A stretch of DNA of 64,000 nucleotides from Obrimoposthia wandeli (lineage: Eukaryota), in the NCBI GenBank assembly GCA_977020255.1, contig CDROCS010000253.1, positions 1,364,001 through 1,428,000 of the forward strand. The letters run 5' to 3'. Position 1 is the first letter of the stretch, and every line of letters begins with the position of its first letter. This document shows positions 461 to 48,490 of the stretch, in pieces. The notes under the pieces are model-generated. The model had not been told where the DNA came from. It saw nothing but the letters and a program-made list of their open reading frames with translations, and did no database searches. The translations under genes were made by a program, and so were the position numbers.

Positions 461-1474
461 CTAGAGCAAAGTAACCTTATTAAATGCATCAAGAAGAACT
501 TGTCCACTGGCACCATCTTTACCTGCGCACTCACTCAGGTGTTGTCTGAATTTTCGTGCTCCTGATAAGCCATTACAAAGACCTAACATGTGACGTAATA
601 CATGCCACGCCCGACCTCCATCTTTAATCGTTTCATCGATGTAGGGGACCATTAAATCAATCACTTCCGATCTTGTTAATTTTGTACTATTGGAATGGTA
701 TATTTCATTATCTGCATCCGCTAGCATATACGGACTGTTATATACTTCCCGTCCAATCATTACACCATCAACATGTTGTAGATGAACATTCGCTTCAGTA
801 AAAGTTTTAATACCACCATTAATGGATATTTCTAAGCTATCAAAATCATTTTTTATTTGATAGACACGTCCATAGTCTAATGGGGGAACATCACGATTCT
901 GTTTAGGACTTAATCCGGTTAACCAAGCTTTTCTTGCATGGATTATGAAATGGCGGCAATCAGCTTTTGATACCTCTTCAATAAAATTATGTAAAAATTC
1001 GTAAGAGTCCAGGTCATCTATACCAATTCGTGATTTGACTGTAACAGGGATGTTGGTTGCTGCCTGCATCTGATTAACACATTCTGCAACGACGGCAGGT
1101 TCAGCCATCAAGCAAGCACCGAAACGACCATTCTGCACCCTATCAGAAGGACAACCAACATTAATGTTTATTTCATCATAACCATATTGTTCAGCAATTT
1201 TGGCACACTCAGTCATCGCTTTAACATCACTGCCGCCAAGTTGTAATACCAACGGGTGCTCGGCTTCGTTATATGATAAATAATCTCCTTTACCGCGTAA
1301 AACAGCTCCAGTAGTGACCATTTCAGTGTAAAGCACAGTGTGCTGAGTCATGAGTCGATAGAAAAATCGAGAATGTTTATCTGTCCAATCGAGCATGGGC
1401 GCAACGCTTAGCCTGTGATTGACTGTATTACTTGGTGTTAAAGGGGTTGAGTCTTGTTTTTGTTGGTTTGTCAT
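461..1474 (-). CDS. dusA: tRNA-dihydrouridine(20/20a) synthase DusA
   Basis: SVAPMLDWTD, NxGCPS, HARKAWLTGLSPKQNR motifs; ~20-aa polar N-terminal extension. Confidence 0.97.
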   Translation of the reverse strand: MTNQQKQDSTPLTPSNTVNHRLSVAPMLDWTDKHSRFFYRLMTQHTVLYTEMVTTGAVLRGKGDYLSYNEAEHPLVLQLGGSDVKAMTECAKIAEQYGYDEININVGCPSDRVQNGRFGACLMAEPAVVAECVNQMQAATNIPVTVKSRIGIDDLDSYEFLHNFIEEVSKADCRHFIIHARKAWLTGLSPKQNRDVPPLDYGRVYQIKNDFDSLEISINGGIKTFTEANVHLQHVDGVMIGREVYNSPYMLADADNEIYHSNSTKLTRSEVIDLMVPYIDETIKDGGRAWHVLRHMLGLCNGLSGARKFRQHLSECAGKDGASGQVLLDAFNKVTLL

Positions 1475-7264: not shown

Positions 7265-9502
7265 TTATATTTTGGGAAGGTTACTTTGTTGATGTAAAAA
7301 ATTAATAAACTCGTCTGCGGGCATCGGCTTAGCATAATAAAAACCTTGAACTTCATCACAGCCCAATTCAATTAAACGCTCTTGCTGCTCAATTTCTTCA
7401 ATACCTTCAGCAATGACTTTCAGTTGCATCTTCTTACCTAAATTAATGATGGTTTCGGCAATAACTGATTGGCCTTCTTGAGTAATATCGGTGACAAATG
7501 CACGGTCCACTTTTAGTCGATCAAGGGGAAGTTTTTGCAAGTAACTTAATGAAGAAAATCCAGTACCAAAATCATCGAGTGCTATGCTTACTCCTTGAGC
7601 TTTTAACTTGGTTAACGCATCAATGATAACTTGTGGTTCATCCATTAGAATATTTTCAGTTATTTCTAATTCAAGTTTATTCGGTTTAATTTTATGCTGA
7701 GTCATTGTATTGATTATATTATCGACAAAATTATCCTGCCTAAACTGTGGAATAGAAACATTGACTGAAATACTAAGCTCGGCAAAGTTTTTTTCTAATA
7801 TTTTTAGTTGCTTACATGCCTGACTGATAACCCAGTCCCCGATTTCAATAATTAATCCTGAATATTCGGCTAAGGGAATAAAAACAGCAGGAGAAACAAA
7901 TTTTCCATCTGCCGTACGCCAGCGTAATAAAGCCTCAGCACCAATAACTTTGCCTGTAGTTAATGATAATTGTGGTTGATACCAAAGCTCAAGACAGTTA
8001 TTTGCAAAATCATTACGCAGTTGGCGAATCATGTTTAGACGCCATTGCATTTGATCTTCTATATCCGAGTGGTAATAGGCAAAGTGCTCTAAACGATTCT
8101 TTTTGGCTATATTCAACGCAATATTAATTTGATTTAATACTTGTACGCCACTGCTTTGGGCATGTTCTTTAGTACATAAGCCAAAACAAGCATTAATAGG
8201 AAGGTGTTGCTCACCTGCGGTAAAAGGTTGGTGAAATAGTGCAATTAAACTTTCAGGGGTTAAACAATCAGCAGGACCAATAATACCAAAAACGTCTGCA
8301 CCCACACGAGCAAACTGACAGTCACAATCTATGCTTTGCATTCGCTGACCGACCGCAGAGAGTAGCTTATTGCCAATATCTTGTCCTAAAGCATCATTGA
8401 TATCACTGAAATGATTTATATCAATTAAGGCTGCAACTTTGTTTGTACAATCATTTTGGGCAAAATCATCAAGTAAGCGAACAAATTCTAGGCGATTTGG
8501 TAAATTGGTTAATCCGTCTTTATAAGCAGCGTTAGTGAGTTTTTGAAATAAGTGAACATTTTCGTAACTGACAGCAATGCCGGTTAAAAATACATTCAAT
8601 AGCTGGATTTGGATTTCTGTTAGTGGACTCGTAAGCCTGACATGGATGACAGCACGGTAATCACCTTTGGCAACATAAAGATTAAGGCTGTCATCGAGAT
8701 ATTGATGCTTTTGTTGTAAGAAGCAAGCTTTGACTTGTTTATTTGCTTGGTGATCTTGTAACTTATCAAGTTTTTGATTGATTAAGTTATCATCAAAGCC
8801 TATTTGCGCTAAGACATAAAAACTCAAGTCATCAATATTATCAATGATTCCTTGACCTCTAGCGCAAAAAACGGCAGATAGGTCATCACTAATAAGGGGT
8901 CTTAATTGTGCTAAAACGCTCTGACTATAGGTAGAAAGAGAGTGCTGTGACGACAACTCGGTAGCACCTGAAACTATTTTCTCAAGACCTTGACGGTTCT
9001 CATTGACGGTCGCTATTTGTTGAAAAGAGCGAATGGCGGCAAAAACGGTAGTGACTAACTTACGGCGAGTTAGCTCAGTTTTTGTCTTATAATCATTAAT
9101 ATCATATTCTTTTATGACACTTTCTTCGGGAGCATAGCCAGGTTGCCCTGTACGTAAAACAATGCGGATATCTTTTCGCTGTAATGTTTCTCTTATGTAT
9201 TTGACAACATTTAAACCAGCATCATCAGTTTCCATAACAACATCGAGCAGTACCAGCACAATGTCGTCATTTTTTTCAATTATTTGGCAGGCATCTTTAC
9301 CTGAATAGGCATGTAAGTACTCAAGACGGCGTCCTAATACGACAAGATCCGATAAGGCTAATTGAGTTACTGAATGAATCTCTGGATCATCATCAACAAT
9401 TAGTACTTGCCAAGTTTCATTACTGCCAAATGCTAAAATATCGTCTTCAGCACTATCATCGATAAATAAAAAGTCATCGTGTGAATTTTCGGATGCTTGC
9501 AT
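7265..9502 (-). CDS. Response regulator c-di-GMP phosphodiesterase: REC + DUF3369-like + degenerate GGDEF + EAL
   Basis: LIVDDD/LLDVVM receiver; GGDEF replaced by GADVF; intact EAL and DDFGTG. Confidence 0.9.
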   Translation of the reverse strand: MQASENSHDDFLFIDDSAEDDILAFGSNETWQVLIVDDDPEIHSVTQLALSDLVVLGRRLEYLHAYSGKDACQIIEKNDDIVLVLLDVVMETDDAGLNVVKYIRETLQRKDIRIVLRTGQPGYAPEESVIKEYDINDYKTKTELTRRKLVTTVFAAIRSFQQIATVNENRQGLEKIVSGATELSSQHSLSTYSQSVLAQLRPLISDDLSAVFCARGQGIIDNIDDLSFYVLAQIGFDDNLINQKLDKLQDHQANKQVKACFLQQKHQYLDDSLNLYVAKGDYRAVIHVRLTSPLTEIQIQLLNVFLTGIAVSYENVHLFQKLTNAAYKDGLTNLPNRLEFVRLLDDFAQNDCTNKVAALIDINHFSDINDALGQDIGNKLLSAVGQRMQSIDCDCQFARVGADVFGIIGPADCLTPESLIALFHQPFTAGEQHLPINACFGLCTKEHAQSSGVQVLNQINIALNIAKKNRLEHFAYYHSDIEDQMQWRLNMIRQLRNDFANNCLELWYQPQLSLTTGKVIGAEALLRWRTADGKFVSPAVFIPLAEYSGLIIEIGDWVISQACKQLKILEKNFAELSISVNVSIPQFRQDNFVDNIINTMTQHKIKPNKLELEITENILMDEPQVIIDALTKLKAQGVSIALDDFGTGFSSLSYLQKLPLDRLKVDRAFVTDITQEGQSVIAETIINLGKKMQLKVIAEGIEEIEQQERLIELGCDEVQGFYYAKPMPADEFINFLHQQSNLPKI

Positions 9503-29615: not shown

Positions 29616-29930
29616 GTGATTGTCTCGCAAGAGAATTGCCTAGTGTTGGTCGGTGAGGTGGTGAGAACCCCCAAACAGTCAACCAGCCCTGCAGGTATTA
29701 GTCATAGTCAGTTTTCAATAGACCATAAGTCTATACAAAATGAAGCTGGCATGAATCGACAAGCATTTGTCCGAATACAAGTAGTTGCTACAGGTGATTT
29801 ATCACACTTAACTCGTGAATTAATTGCGGGGAATGTAATAAAAGTGACAGGTTTTATAAATCGTCATGAATCTAGAAACGGTAATCCGCTTTTAGCATTA
29901 CATGCTCAGCAAATTGAAATGATTAATTAG
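29616..29930 (+). CDS. priB: Primosomal replication protein N
   Basis: NCLVLVG, SPAGISH, V.GFI..H; position between rpsF and rpsR. Confidence 0.9.
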   Translation: MIVSQENCLVLVGEVVRTPKQSTSPAGISHSQFSIDHKSIQNEAGMNRQAFVRIQVVATGDLSHLTRELIAGNVIKVTGFINRHESRNGNPLLALHAQQIEMIN

Positions 29931-29983
29931 GCTTTATTTACTAACAAAATAGTTAATTAAATAAAACCATATTGGAGAACTCC

Positions 29984-30211
29984 ATGTCTCGTTTTTTTAG
30001 ACGTCGTAAGTTTTGCCGCTTCACAGCGGAAGGCGCAACATCTATCGATTATAAAGATATTGCAACGTTAAAAAATTATATCACTGAAAGTGGTAAAATT
30101 GTTCCTAGCCGTATCACTGGTACTGCTGCTAAATATCAACGTCAATTAACTCGTGCTATTAAACGCGCTCGTTACTTGTCATTGTTACCATACACCGACT
30201 TACATAAGTAA
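29984..30211 (+). CDS. rpsR: 30S ribosomal protein S18
   Basis: [24 protein letters not shown]. Confidence 0.99.
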
Positions 30212-45807: not shown

Positions 45808-46104
45808 ATGTTTGGTTTTCATTTTTGTAAAGTGATGGGGGTGAGTATGTCACCTCGTATACCTGAAAATAGCTATGTTTTTGTTGTGCCTTGGCTGAAG
45901 ATATTTAACTTAAAAGAGGGTTGTTTACTTAAGGTATTTCACCCTCGCTATGGCTATATTGTTAAGTCATTAGCGCAAGTGGATAGAAATGGCTTGTTTT
46001 GGCTTAAAGGCCATCATAAAACCAGTTTGCCTATTGAGAAGCTAGGCCCTGTGGGCAAATCACAGATACAAGGAAAGGTGTTGTGGGTATTTCCACCTAA
46101 ATAG
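45808..46104 (+). CDS. sodX: Ni-SOD maturation protease (S26-like)
   Basis: V.G.SM.P, IVKS, W..G motifs; immediately downstream of sodN. Confidence 0.9.
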   Translation: MFGFHFCKVMGVSMSPRIPENSYVFVVPWLKIFNLKEGCLLKVFHPRYGYIVKSLAQVDRNGLFWLKGHHKTSLPIEKLGPVGKSQIQGKVLWVFPPK

Positions 46105-46182
46105 GTGATAGACTTCGTTAGGATAAGTTTAGGGAATATAGCAAGCAACTTCGCTGCTAAGACTATAAACCCTATAGCGTCA

Positions 46183-46740
46183 TTATAGGAAGCTTAAACC
46201 CTGTTTTAACAATGAAGATGCTTCTTTATAACCACTTTTGTCTAAATAACCGCTGAAGCTATTGATTAGACCGGGCACTTGTTCACTAGAAACACCCAAT
46301 TTTTCAAAGGCTGAATTTAAGTAATCCATACTCTCTGCTTTTTTACCCGCTTCGCCGGCACTTGAAAATAAAGAACTCATTGACGATTTTGTTACTTTTG
46401 GCGCTTTATCTAAATAGCTTTGTAAATCAGGTACCGCTGTGCTGATGAGAGAAAAGTTTTCTGGGGATAAATTATCTTGCGCTACTTTAAGGAGTGAGCC
46501 AAAACTGGCTGCAACAGTCCCTTCCGATAAATTTAACTGTTTCGCGGCATATTCGATCATAGCGCTTGTTTCTAATGGTACACCTATATCTTTAGCGGCC
46601 GTTTTAAGCTGCTCAGATGAAGATTTAGTAATGGTGTCTAAGTCGATGGCACTGGCTGTGAATGAGGTTAAGCCAGCTAAACTAATAAGTGCAACTGAGG
46701 CTGATAGGCATATAATTGATAATTTCACGATTAACTCCAT
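46183..46740 (-). CDS. DUF2780-like secreted protein
   Basis: Signal peptide; L...L......G.LL..AQ..LSPENFS.I..AVP pattern. Confidence 0.7.
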   Translation of the reverse strand: MELIVKLSIICLSASVALISLAGLTSFTASAIDLDTITKSSSEQLKTAAKDIGVPLETSAMIEYAAKQLNLSEGTVAASFGSLLKVAQDNLSPENFSLISTAVPDLQSYLDKAPKVTKSSMSSLFSSAGEAGKKAESMDYLNSAFEKLGVSSEQVPGLINSFSGYLDKSGYKEASSLLKQGLSFL

Positions 46741-46828
46741 GTTAAAATTTTGTAATAGATTACTTTAACATGCTTACTGAAAAAATTTACAGGAATTGTT
46801 TATTGAAAGTATATAGCGTTGCACAAAT

Positions 46829-47005
46829 AAAAAGGCCCTTCTCGAAGAGAAAGGCCTGAAATGCTCGCATATTGGTCTTGTTACCAAGCTTCTTATTATT
46901 AATTTTTTGTAGCTACTGTTTTTATTATTTTTAGTTTGAGCTACTTTTGTTTTCTTTCTGTCTTTGTTTTTATTTTTTGTTTTTATTATTGTTTTTCTTT
47001 AGCGC
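46829..47005 (-). ncRNA. Candidate A-rich sRNA (~177 nt) with AAnAAnAA repeats
   Basis: TTGCGA-17-TATAAA promoter, no ORF, A-rich body, GGCCTTTCTC/GAGAAGGGCC-T5 terminator. Confidence 0.7.
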
Positions 47006-47011
47006 AGGCAT

Positions 47012-47040
47012 TTTATACCAAAGCCTTTTTACCATCGCAA
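47012..47040 (-). promoter_or_regulatory. sigma70 promoter of the candidate sRNA
   Basis: -35 TTGCGA (47040-47035), 17-nt spacer, extended -10 TG-n-TATAAA (47017-47012). Confidence 0.7.
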
Positions 47041-47419
47041 CAACTTTAGTAGAGCATAAACTCGACGACATCTTTCGTAGTAGGCTTGTTTAACAAGCAT
47101 AAACGGCTAACCTATTGATTCAAAGTTCATTGGTAAAAATCAAGTATAAATTAGCGTCTTAAAAAAAAAGTTATATAAATTGAATTTTTATATTTTGGTG
47201 ACGTTTTATTGTTGATTCAACGACATTTTATTTTTCAGGAGTGTTGATTTAGCGCATAGATCAAAAGGCTGGTCGATGCTAAACTGCGCAGCATAAAAAC
47301 CATTGGCGAGATGCTTTTAAACAACCGCCGCTCAAGAACTAAATTAAATGAGTCATGGGGCGTTATTACGAACAAGTAATTTTGCAAACTGACTACAAAG
47401 TAAAAAACAAGAGGAACTA

Positions 47420-48490
47420 TTGGTGACAGAATTAAAAAATGATACCTATTTACGTGCGCTATTAAAGCAACCAGTAGATTACACGCCGGTATGGATGATG
47501 CGCCAAGCGGGTCGTTATTTACCTGAGTATCGTGCGGTACGTAAAGAAGCCGGTGACTTTATGTCGGTATGTAAAAATGCTGAACTGGCTTGTGAAGTAA
47601 CAATTCAACCACTACGTCGTTTCCCATTAGATGCTGCCATTTTGTTTAGTGATATTTTAACTATTCCCGATGCAATGGGCTTAGGTTTATATTTTGAAAC
47701 AGGTGAGGGACCAAAATTTGAACGTCCTATTACCTGTAAAGCTGATGTTGATAAAATTGCCGTACCTGATCCAGAAGATGAATTAGGTTATGTAATGAAT
47801 GCCGTGCGTACTATTCGCAAAGAACTCAAAGGCGAAGTACCGCTTATTGGTTTTTCAGGTAGCCCATGGACATTAGCAACCTACATGATTGAAGGTGGTA
47901 GCTCTAAAGCTTTCACTAAAATCAAAAAAATGATGTTTGCTGAACCACAAACCTTACATTTATTACTTGATAAGTTAGCTGACTCAGTAATTAGTTATTT
48001 AAATGCCCAAATTGCTGCAGGCGCACAATCAGTGATGGTATTTGATACTTGGGGCGGCGTATTATCACCACGTGATTACAATGAATTCTCACTACAATAT
48101 ATGGCGAAAATTGTTGATGGTTTAACGCGTCATAATGAAGGCCGTAAAGTACCAGTGACATTATTCACTAAAAATGCGGGTATGTGGTTAGAGTCTATCG
48201 CGGCAACAGGTTGTGATGCAGTTGGTTTAGATTGGACCATTGATATTGAAAACGCCAAAGCACGCATTGGTGATAAAGTTGCGTTACAAGGTAATATGGA
48301 CCCATCCATGTTATATGCACCATTGCCACGTATTGAACAAGAAGTTTCAAAAATACTAGCAGGTTTTGGTGAAGGCGGTACAGGTCATGTATTCAACTTA
48401 GGTCATGGTATTCACCCAGATGTGAACCCTGATCATGCAGGTCATTTCATTGAATCAGTACACCGTTTAAGCAAGCCTTATCATAAATAA
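47420..48490 (+). CDS. hemE: Uroporphyrinogen decarboxylase
   Basis: [29 protein letters not shown]. Confidence 0.99.

What the first reader, a model, noticed from the sequence alone, without database searches (positions are those of the whole stretch)
46829..47040. Unannotated A-rich sRNA candidate with its own promoter and terminator: possible Hfq/Crc sponge
Seen: on the minus strand, divergent from hemE, a sigma70 promoter (TTGCGA-17-TATAAA, extended -10) precedes ~177 nt with no ORF, ending in a 10-bp hairpin plus U5. The body (46891-47000) is mostly A with overlapping AAnAAnAA triplet runs, a 13-nt direct repeat AATAATAAAAACA (46917-46929, 46978-46990) and AGTAGCT twice. Known: Pseudomonas CrcZ/CrcY use AAnAAnAA motifs to titrate Hfq-Crc and relieve catabolite repression; CsrB-type RNAs use GGA repeats, which are lacking here. 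Inference: a CrcZ-like decoy RNA in a lineage where I know of none, driven by sigma70 rather than CbrB/sigma54. It could alternatively act as an attenuating leader for the DUF2780 gene about 90 nt downstream.
Basis: partly seen in the sequence, partly recalled or inferred. Interest (0 to 1): 0.75.

Follow-up and report, generated by a model that had tools for sequence, protein, structure and literature searches.

The report
Small RNA gene with expandable A-rich tract
This is a real, strongly conserved small-RNA gene that sits back-to-back with hemE in Colwellia-family marine bacteria; its A-rich stretch looks like a docking site for the RNA chaperone Hfq that has been enlarged by duplication, but nothing shows it is a CrcZ-type decoy.

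Summary
On the minus strand, TTGCGA-17-TGgTATAAA (47040-47012) precedes about 181 nt (47005-46825). This stretch is 69% A in its body and ends in an 11-bp hairpin plus U-run.

It is a conserved gene. I found 17 genomic and 119 metagenomic Colwelliaceae copies. They share the promoter, an upstream dyad TACGA-N6-TCGT, a 5' GCGCUA, a small covarying hairpin, an invariant single-stranded GCGAGCAUUUC and the terminator.

The gene is tied to hemE: hemE lies divergently upstream in 90 of 92 loci. DUF2780 lies downstream in only 21 of 104, so it is not that gene's leader.

Copies range from about 88 to 190 nt. Only the A-rich (A-R-N, AAYAAYAA) tract varies, growing by duplication. The window copy is an expanded form.

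Best reading: an Hfq-type base-pairing sRNA. It occupies the same position as Vibrio VcrX/Vcr017, which is also divergent from hemE, about 95 nt and Hfq- and CRP-dependent. Sequence homology to VcrX is not statistically demonstrable.

CrcZ membership fails: there is no sigma-54 promoter, no Rfam match and a different locus. Some Hfq titration by the expanded tract remains possible.

The scan found this RNA before on other DNA (s1-198695).

The parts
47064..47079 (-). Upstream dyad TACGA-N6-TCGTC, centred about -66 from the predicted start; probably the site of an unidentified dimeric regulator
   Evidence: ACGA-N6-TCGT sits at a fixed distance (-38 from the -35 hexamer) in 87 of 93 distinct promoter regions. 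Its half-sites are conserved and its spacer is free. It is also present in the Thalassotalea genomes L015 and L023.
47012..47040 (-). Promoter: -35 TTGCGA (47040-47035), 17-nt spacer, extended -10 TGgTATAAA (47020-47012)
   Evidence: Read. Identity across 13 Colwellia loci is 95-98%. TTGC..TTTGnTATAAA is present in all metagenomic copies with enough flank.
46825..47005 (-). Predicted sRNA transcript, about 181 nt. The start is inferred from the -10; the end is the terminator U-run.
   Evidence: Homologues run 157-183 nt in Colwellia genomes and 88-96 nt in Thalassotalea and relatives.
46946..47000 (-). A-rich module 1. It holds an A-R-N run of 9 triplets and AACAAUAAUAA. Its 5' half is conserved; its 3' half is indel-prone.
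   Evidence: Identity is 0.97 at 47000-46981 and drops to 0.54-0.60 at 46980-46941 because of indels.
46909..46944 (-). Stem GUAGCU/AGCUAC closing a 24-nt A-rich loop that contains AAUAAUAAAAAC (module 2)
   Evidence: Predicted in the MFE fold and in RNAalifold (AGCU/AGCU invariant). Analogous short stems close A-rich loops in other lineages.
46889..46908 (-). A-rich module 3 (AAAAAAUUAAUAAUAAGAAG). This is the ancestral block, present in all family members.
   Evidence: AAUAAGAA is invariant or nearly so across 17 genomic copies.
46877..46888 (-). Small hairpin CUUG-GUAA-CAAG
   Evidence: The third pair is U-A in Colwellia and A-U in Thalassotalea and relatives (4 compensatory cells). All pairs are replaced in Alteromonas (CCCU/AGGG, CUC/GAG).
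46858..46876 (-). Single-stranded seed-like segment ACCAAUAUGCGAGCAUUUC, with GCGAGCAUUUC (46868-46858) invariant
   Evidence: Invariant in 17 copies that were collected through neighbouring proteins, not through this sequence. It is unpaired in the consensus fold.
46825..46857 (-). Intrinsic terminator: 11-bp stem, 3-nt loop, U5AU3
   Evidence: Four stem pairs show compensatory changes and 99.3% of cells are paired.

Best explanation
The stretch is an independently transcribed, trans-acting small RNA of a family that is fixed divergently upstream of hemE in Colwelliaceae.

Its constant chassis has five parts: a 5' GCGCUA, an A-R-N block, a 4-bp hairpin, an invariant single-stranded segment (GCGAGCAUUUC) and a Rho-independent terminator with a U-tail. 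This is the build of an Hfq-dependent, 'class II-like' base-pairing sRNA. The U-tail would bind the proximal face of Hfq and the A-R-N / AAYAAYAA tract the distal face. The invariant segment would pair with mRNA targets that are still unknown.

In Colwellia proper, including this window, the A-R-N block has been multiplied by tandem duplication from about 20 nt to about 110 nt. Part of it is displayed in a loop closed by a short stem. I infer that this raises avidity for Hfq and so affects stability and competition with other sRNAs. It may add a titrating side-effect.

Transcription comes from a sigma-70 extended -10 promoter, probably under an activator bound at the conserved dyad TACGA-N6-TCGT.

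The family is most likely the counterpart, and possibly the orthologue, of Vibrio VcrX/Vcr017.

Shown here: gene-like conservation, structure covariation, linkage to hemE, length polymorphism confined to the A-tract, and motif content. Inferred, not shown: transcription, Hfq binding, base-pairing, the regulator, and orthology to VcrX.
For: Conservation. The promoter, 5' end, 3' part and terminator are 92-98% identical across 13 Colwellia species. That is above the adjacent DUF2780 coding sequence at 75-94%.

Family size. Model R1 finds all 17 genomic copies at 92-109 bits. A pattern scan adds 119 metagenomic loci with 88 distinct sequences.

Structure. 99.5% of cells are paired, 5 pairs have double changes, and 0 of 500 shuffles reach the covariation score.

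Linkage. hemE is divergently upstream in 90 of 92 loci.

Length. Copies run from 88 to 190 nt, with variation confined to the A-rich tract. Tandem units are visible, such as the 13-nt repeat in the window and (AAUAACAACAAAA)n in L103 and L132.

A-R-N content. Across the family there are 750 triplets in runs of 4 or more, against 417 +/- 28 in shuffles. Non-A positions recur at 3-nt spacing (observed/expected 1.4-1.5 at distances 3 and 6).

Hfq motif. Four AAYAAYAA motifs lie in the window RNA. This is the genomic-SELEX consensus for Hfq aptamers (PMC2887942).

VcrX parallel. Vcr017 lies at NC_002505 350273-350369 (-), between VC0331 and VC0332 (PMC9732341 supplement). L014 shows this interval is nudC-hemE. 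VcrX is 95 nt, Hfq-dependent, CRP-dependent and represses chitin genes by base-pairing (bioRxiv 10.64898/2026.08.28.747715).

Shared details with VcrX: a TGnTA(T/A)AAA -10 lacking T-7, a 5' CGCUAGC, an A-rich stretch, then a hairpin, a single strand and a terminator. Alteromonas copies bridge the two families. They have AAGAAGC-hairpin-ACC as in Colwelliaceae and AUCUCAU after the hairpin as in Vibrio.
Against: There is no expression data.

Hfq binding and targets are untested. No convincing target turned up among 69 translation-initiation regions of the window (best -20.1 against a mean of -14.1 +/- 3.4 kcal/mol).

Sequence and structure searches do not link the Colwelliaceae family to VcrX. 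R1 gives no Vibrio hit at E<=10, and nhmmer finds nothing in either direction. The Vibrio upstream motif CTTTGCnnnCnnGATCA is absent here, so orthology rests on position and architecture.

In the window sequence alone, the A-R-N runs are no more than its A-richness predicts.

The invariance of GCGAGCAUUUC in the 119 metagenomic copies is circular, because it was part of the search pattern.
Confidence: 0.6

Rival explanations
1. A pure protein decoy. The RNA would act mainly by soaking up Hfq, or an Hfq-Crc-like complex, on its many AAnAAnAA motifs and so relieve repression of other mRNAs, as CrcZ does in Pseudomonas.
For: There are about 20-28 A-R-N triplets and 4 AAYAAYAA motifs in the window copy. 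That is enough for several Hfq distal faces. The tract has expanded repeatedly and independently in several lineages and is often displayed in loops closed by short stems, which suggests selection on the tract itself.
Against: The minimal family members (88-96 nt) carry a single short A-R-N block yet keep the hairpin, the invariant single-stranded segment and the terminator. A decoy does not need these. There is no CrcZ/CrcY match in Rfam, no sigma-54 promoter (sequence), and the locus is not next to cbrB. Whether Colwellia has a Crc partner was not testable here.
Confidence: 0.2
2. The A-rich RNA binds a different protein that prefers unstructured A-rich RNA, for example ribosomal protein S1, a cold-shock protein or ProQ. 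That could be relevant for cold-adapted Colwellia.
For: The largest expansions are in Colwellia proper, which includes psychrophiles. The tract is predicted to be unstructured.
Against: The 3-nt periodicity and the AAYAAYAA motifs point specifically to the Hfq distal face. The Vibrio RNA at the same position is Hfq-dependent. No direct evidence exists for any other partner.
Confidence: 0.1
3. A cis-acting leader or attenuator of the downstream DUF2780 gene. Transcription would start at 47005 and the terminator would gate read-through.
For: It is on the same strand, about 85 nt upstream of the DUF2780 start in the window and in 13 Colwellia genomes.
Against: DUF2780 follows the RNA in only 21 of 104 loci. 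In Thalassotalea and relatives the downstream gene differs or is convergent. The sequence just after the terminator is the least conserved (0.60-0.68). The DUF2780 gene has its own conserved extended -10, TGtTAAAGT (46770-46762).
Confidence: 0.03
4. Not a functional RNA: an A-rich spacer with a stray promoter-like site and a terminator that merely insulates hemE from neighbours.
For: No expression data were obtainable. The middle of the A-tract is indel-prone.
Against: The promoter, 5' end, hairpin, single-stranded segment and terminator are near-invariant across genera, with compensatory changes in both helices. The terminator points away from hemE, so it cannot terminate hemE.
Confidence: 0.05

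Closest known systems
VcrX / Vcr017 (Vcr17) of Vibrio (bioRxiv 10.64898/2026.08.28.747715; Hfq RIL-seq PMC9732341)
   Same: It is transcribed divergently from hemE, in the intergenic region just upstream of it.

It is about 95 nt, against 88-96 nt for the minimal Colwelliaceae forms.

Both have an extended -10 of the form TGnTA(T/A)AAA lacking T-7, preceded by TTGCG.

Both transcripts begin with (C)GCUAGC followed by an A-rich stretch, a short hairpin, a single-stranded segment and a Rho-independent terminator.

Neither is in Rfam 15.
   Different: There is no significant sequence or structure match in either direction.

The Vibrio upstream motif CTTTGCnnnCnnGATCA is replaced here by the dyad TACGA-N6-TCGT.

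The seed segment differs: CAUCUCAUAACGACAUCUUAC in Vibrio against ACC-N5-GCGAGCAUUUC here.

The window copy is twice as long because of the expanded A-R-N tract.

In Vibrio the RNA converges on nudC. In this window it is followed by the DUF2780 gene.

Hfq and CRP dependence and chitin-gene targets are shown only for Vibrio.
CrcZ / CrcY / CrcX of Pseudomonas (Hfq-Crc-titrating RNAs)
   Same: It has multiple AAnAAnAA / A-R-N motifs on an otherwise unstructured RNA that ends in an intrinsic terminator. A titrating effect on Hfq is conceivable.
   Different: It has a sigma-70 promoter rather than a CbrB/sigma-54 one, and its locus is hemE rather than cbrB. It is about 180 nt, with ancestral forms of about 90 nt, against about 400 nt for CrcZ (from my knowledge of the field). 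There is no Rfam match. It also has an invariant seed-like segment and a small conserved hairpin.
Class II Hfq-dependent sRNAs of enterobacteria (ChiX, MgrR, CyaR, McaS; classification recalled from my knowledge of the field)
   Same: A-R-N motifs upstream plus a terminator U-tail on a short intergenic sRNA. This predicts binding to the distal and proximal faces of Hfq and strong competition for Hfq.
   Different: There is no sequence relation. The best Rfam near-miss is CyaR at 19 bits against a gathering score of 47. I know of no enterobacterial example with a length-polymorphic A-R-N tract expanded by duplication.

Membership tests
CrcZ/CrcY-type Hfq-Crc sponge RNA | Match to the Rfam covariance models for CrcZ/CrcY/CrcX | tested here: not met
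   cmscan of 46000-48000 at E<=10 lists only chance hits (L10_leader, CyaR and others at 15-19 bits) and no Crc family. The whole window has no gathering-level hit.
CrcZ/CrcY-type Hfq-Crc sponge RNA | RpoN (sigma-54) promoter activated by CbrB; gene next to cbrB | tested here: not met
   No GG-N10-GC element lies upstream of 47005. A TTGCGA-17-TGgTATAAA sigma-70 promoter is there instead. The neighbours are hemE and DUF2780.
CrcZ/CrcY-type Hfq-Crc sponge RNA | Several A-rich AAnAAnAA motifs in unpaired regions | tested here: met
   Four AAYAAYAA motifs and A-R-N runs of 9, 7, 5, 4 and 4 triplets. The tract is unpaired or in loops in the folds.
CrcZ/CrcY-type Hfq-Crc sponge RNA | A Crc partner protein encoded in the genome; binding of Hfq-Crc | not testable with these tools
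   Only 64 kb of this genome was available, and I had no Crc sequence by reference. Binding needs an experiment.
VcrX/Vcr017 family (Vibrio) | Position: intergenic, divergent from hemE | tested here: met
   Vcr017 coordinates fall between VC0331 and VC0332. The V. cholerae locus L014 shows nudC, a 241-bp gap, then hemE, with the sRNA on the opposite strand. The arrangement relative to hemE is the same in the window and in 90 of 92 metagenomic loci.
VcrX/Vcr017 family (Vibrio) | Detectable sequence or structure homology | tested here: inconclusive
   The covariance model of the Colwelliaceae core gives no Vibrio hit at E<=10. The Alteromonas syntenic copy scores 20.8 bits, E=0.33. nhmmer finds nothing in either direction. 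Short shared strings are suggestive but were noticed post hoc: 5' CGCUAGC, the -10 type, and AUCUCAU via Alteromonas.
VcrX/Vcr017 family (Vibrio) | Conserved promoter motif CTTTGCnnnCnnGATCA upstream of -35 | tested here: not met
   The motif is present in V. cholerae, Vibrio sp. YMD68 and Salinivibrio. It is absent in Colwelliaceae, which instead have TACGA-N6-TCGT at a fixed position.
VcrX/Vcr017 family (Vibrio) | Hfq-dependent accumulation, CRP dependence, repression of chitin-utilisation mRNAs | not testable with these tools
   These are reported for Vibrio only. No Colwellia expression data or whole genome were available.
Hfq-dependent class II-like base-pairing sRNA | A-R-N motif plus Rho-independent terminator with U-tail on a short intergenic transcript with a conserved unpaired seed | tested here: met
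   The U-tail is U5AU3 in the window and U6AU3 in many relatives.
Hfq-dependent class II-like base-pairing sRNA | Physical binding to Hfq and pairing with targets | not testable with these tools
   This needs co-IP, RIL-seq or EMSA. The in-window target scan was negative.

The most novel reading that the evidence does not exclude
The A-R-N tract is an evolvable 'avidity dial'. On a constant seed-and-terminator chassis, tandem duplication has repeatedly lengthened the Hfq distal-face platform from about 20 to about 110 nt, often looped out by a short closing stem. In Colwellia this would have turned an ordinary base-pairing sRNA into a dual regulator that also titrates Hfq and so globally shifts the sRNA network. 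That would be a CrcZ-like function arising independently from a VcrX-like ancestor.
Probability: 0.25. Interest if true: 0.75.

Novelty: new variant of a known kind. Interest (0 to 1): 0.55.

Why it matters
Colwelliaceae, which include model psychrophiles, have no characterised trans-acting sRNA that I could find. This RNA is one of the best-conserved non-coding elements in the region.

Its link to hemE, shared with Vibrio VcrX and with candidates in Alteromonas, points to an old sRNA locus across the Vibrionales and Alteromonadales whose sequence has turned over while its position and build stayed the same.

The natural series of 88- to 190-nt variants differs only in the number of A-R-N modules. 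That is a ready-made experiment on how distal-face avidity sets sRNA stability and competition for Hfq, and on how a sponge-like RNA might evolve from a base-pairing one.

Tried and rejected
Rfam. At permissive and at gathering thresholds there was no family for the window. The Vibrio, Thalassotalea and Alteromonas loci also gave none, so Rfam cannot speak to the VcrX relation.

Cross-family homology. The covariance model R1 and nhmmer profiles in both directions gave no significant Colwelliaceae-Vibrio link.

Paralogues. The weak R1 hits at window 29924-30012 and L006 5792-5873 are just an A-rich ribosome-binding region or a terminator.

Targets. RNAduplex of the 3' half against 69 start regions in the window gave no outlier. 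hemE and DUF2780 rank 64th and 56th.

Sigma-54 promoter. I checked by eye for GG-N10-GC upstream of 47005 and found none.

Coding potential. The small mechanical ORFs are not conserved, and the ATG at 46870 is absent in the short forms.

Literature. Papenfort et al. 2015 (PMC4343088) is not held, and the supplements of the VcrX preprint are not held. The VcrX seed positions therefore could not be compared.

Identity of the regulator at TACGA-N6-TCGT. It resembles a CRP-S half-site (TGCGA) but differs at a key position, so I left it open.

Presence of hfq or crc in this genome. This could not be checked with the sequence available.

Full report
OBSERVATION

On the minus strand the hexamers TTGCGA (47040-47035) and TATAAA (47017-47012) are 17 nt apart, with TG at 47020-47019. 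The predicted start is about G47005.

The consensus scan missed this promoter only because it requires T at the last -10 position. It did find the terminator: stem 46857-46833, 11 pairs, loop 3, then a U-run to 46825.

The body is 69% A over 110 nt. No other stretch of the window, on either strand, exceeds 0.56 A.

The 13-nt direct repeat is exact and unique: 2 copies against 0.03 expected. AGTAGCT occurs twice here, although that 7-mer is common in the window. Four AAYAAYAA motifs lie inside the RNA.

In this one sequence the A-R-N runs are not significantly more than its composition predicts (p about 0.07-0.1).

ORGANISM AND NEIGHBOURS

The window comes from a Colwellia. The DUF2780 protein is 91% identical to that of C. 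demingiae.

The neighbours are hemE (47420-48490, +), which is divergent, and a DUF2780/VcgC gene (46740-46183, -) downstream. A Ni-SOD operon lies beyond that.

CONSERVATION

In 13 Colwellia genomes the promoter, the first 27 nt or so, the last 95 nt or so and the terminator are 92-98% identical. That is higher than the adjacent coding sequence. The middle of the A-tract is full of indels, and the 60 nt after the terminator are poorly conserved.

I used HemE homologues to fetch hemE loci from other genera. Three Thalassotalea species and a Colwelliaceae isolate have an obvious homologue of only 88-92 nt. It has the same promoter type, a similar 5' end (GCGCUA in two of the four, GCUUUA in the other two), one A-R-N block ending in AAGAAG, a hairpin, ACC-N5-GCGAGCAUUUC and a terminator.

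A covariance model of this core recovers all 17 copies at 92-109 bits.

Both helices covary. The hairpin is CUUG/CAAG in Colwellia and CUAG/CUAG in the short forms. Four terminator pairs show double changes. Overall 99.5% of cells are paired, and 0 of 500 shuffles reach the covariation score.

METAGENOMIC SURVEY

A degenerate pattern spanning the hairpin and seed found 119 loci, with 88 distinct RNAs.

Lengths form a continuum from about 88 to 190 nt. All of the variation sits in the A-rich tract, which shows:
- single long A-R-N runs;
- microsatellite-like tandem units, such as (AAUAACAACAAAA)n in L103 and L132;
- in several lineages, an extra short stem that closes an A-rich loop. Examples are GAAG/CUUC, CUAGCAA/UUGCUAG against CUAGCAG/CUGCUAG, UAGCU/AGCUA in the window's clade, and UCCAAU/AUUGGA.

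Across the family there are 750 A-R-N triplets in runs of 4 or more, against 417 +/- 28 in shuffles. Non-A bases recur at 3-nt spacing. The copies are related, so this is not a strict probability.

hemE is divergently upstream in 90 of 92 loci with enough flank. DUF2780 is downstream in only 21 of 104. That removes the 'leader of DUF2780' reading. The DUF2780 gene also has its own conserved TGtTAAAGT element.

A dyad TACGA-N6-TCGT sits at a fixed distance from the -35 hexamer in 87 of 93 promoters, with a free spacer. This is the signature of a dimeric regulator.

RELATION TO VcrX

I tested that.

The VcrX preprint describes a 95-nt RNA that is Hfq- and CRP-dependent, accumulates in stationary phase, represses chitin genes by pairing and binds Spot 42.

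The RIL-seq supplement places Vcr017 at 350273-350369 (-), between VC0331 (+) and VC0332 (+). A V. cholerae contig shows the order rpoC, rsd, nudC, a 241-bp gap, hemE. The published upstream motif, a TTGCGT-17-TGtTAAAAA promoter, the RNA and its terminator all lie on the strand opposite hemE. Position and orientation relative to hemE are therefore the same as here.

Other shared features are the odd -10 without T-7, a 5' (C)GCUAGC, and the order A-rich stretch, hairpin, single strand, terminator.

Alteromonas has candidates at the same place. They share AAGAAGC-hairpin-ACC with Colwelliaceae, with fully covarying stems. One shares AUCUCAU with Vibrio.

Motilimonas, Glaciecola and Oceanimonas have no room for such a gene or no terminator there.

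However, neither the covariance model nor nhmmer in either direction links Colwelliaceae to Vibrio. The upstream regulatory motifs also differ. I therefore call VcrX the counterpart at the same position and rate orthology at roughly 0.6, not proven.

MECHANISM

The constant chassis is that of an Hfq-dependent base-pairing sRNA. The A-R-N / AAYAAYAA tract (Hfq aptamer consensus, PMC2887942) together with the U-tail predicts binding to the distal and proximal faces of Hfq.

The expansions in Colwellia plausibly raise avidity and could titrate Hfq. Membership in the CrcZ family fails on the Rfam match, the promoter type and the locus.

No target was found in the window.

LIMITS

I had no whole genome, so hfq, crc and targets could not be examined.

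Noticed in passing
window 47232-47296 (between hemE and the sRNA promoter): A 65-bp block is 90-97% conserved across Colwellia. It contains TTGAT-N11-ATCAA and TGCTGCGCAGTTTAGCA-type repeats and lies upstream of the likely hemE promoter. It is probably a regulator site for hemE.
   Followed up: no
window 47084-47098 (-): The perfect palindrome GCTTGTTAAACAAGC lies just upstream of the dyad. Sister Colwellia have CTTGTTCGACCAG there, which resembles a FadR-type box (recalled, not tested). It is present only in the long-form clade.
   Followed up: no
window 46750-46770 (-): The DUF2780 gene has its own conserved extended -10 (TGtTAAAGT), followed by the palindrome GTAATctATTAC. GTG 46728 with a GGAG ribosome-binding site may be the true start rather than ATG 46740.
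   Followed up: partly
L081 7360-7470 (-): A divergent full-length copy of the sRNA is not next to hemE. It lies directly downstream of a phage-integrase gene (7562-8809) and converges on rpsT. It may belong to an island or serve as an attachment site.
   Followed up: partly
L045 5140-5250 (-): Only the 3' half of the sRNA is present. The upstream part is replaced by unrelated AT-rich DNA near a TumE toxin gene and a GGDEF gene. This is either a disrupted copy or an assembly chimera.
   Followed up: partly
L017 2250-2323 (-) and L144 about 1250-1330 (-): Alteromonas pelagimontana and A. australica have an unannotated candidate sRNA of about 75-80 nt, with a terminator, in the nudC-hemE gap. 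It is divergent from hemE.
   Followed up: partly
L103 and L132 (metagenomic copies): These copies have microsatellite-like tandem repeats of a 13-nt unit (AAUAACAACAAAA) inside the sRNA, giving A-R-N runs of 16-21 triplets.
   Followed up: no
L016, L018, L020: Motilimonas, Oceanimonas and Glaciecola have hemE upstream gaps of 63-180 bp with no terminator on the opposite strand. The hemE-linked sRNA is therefore patchy among relatives.
   Followed up: partly
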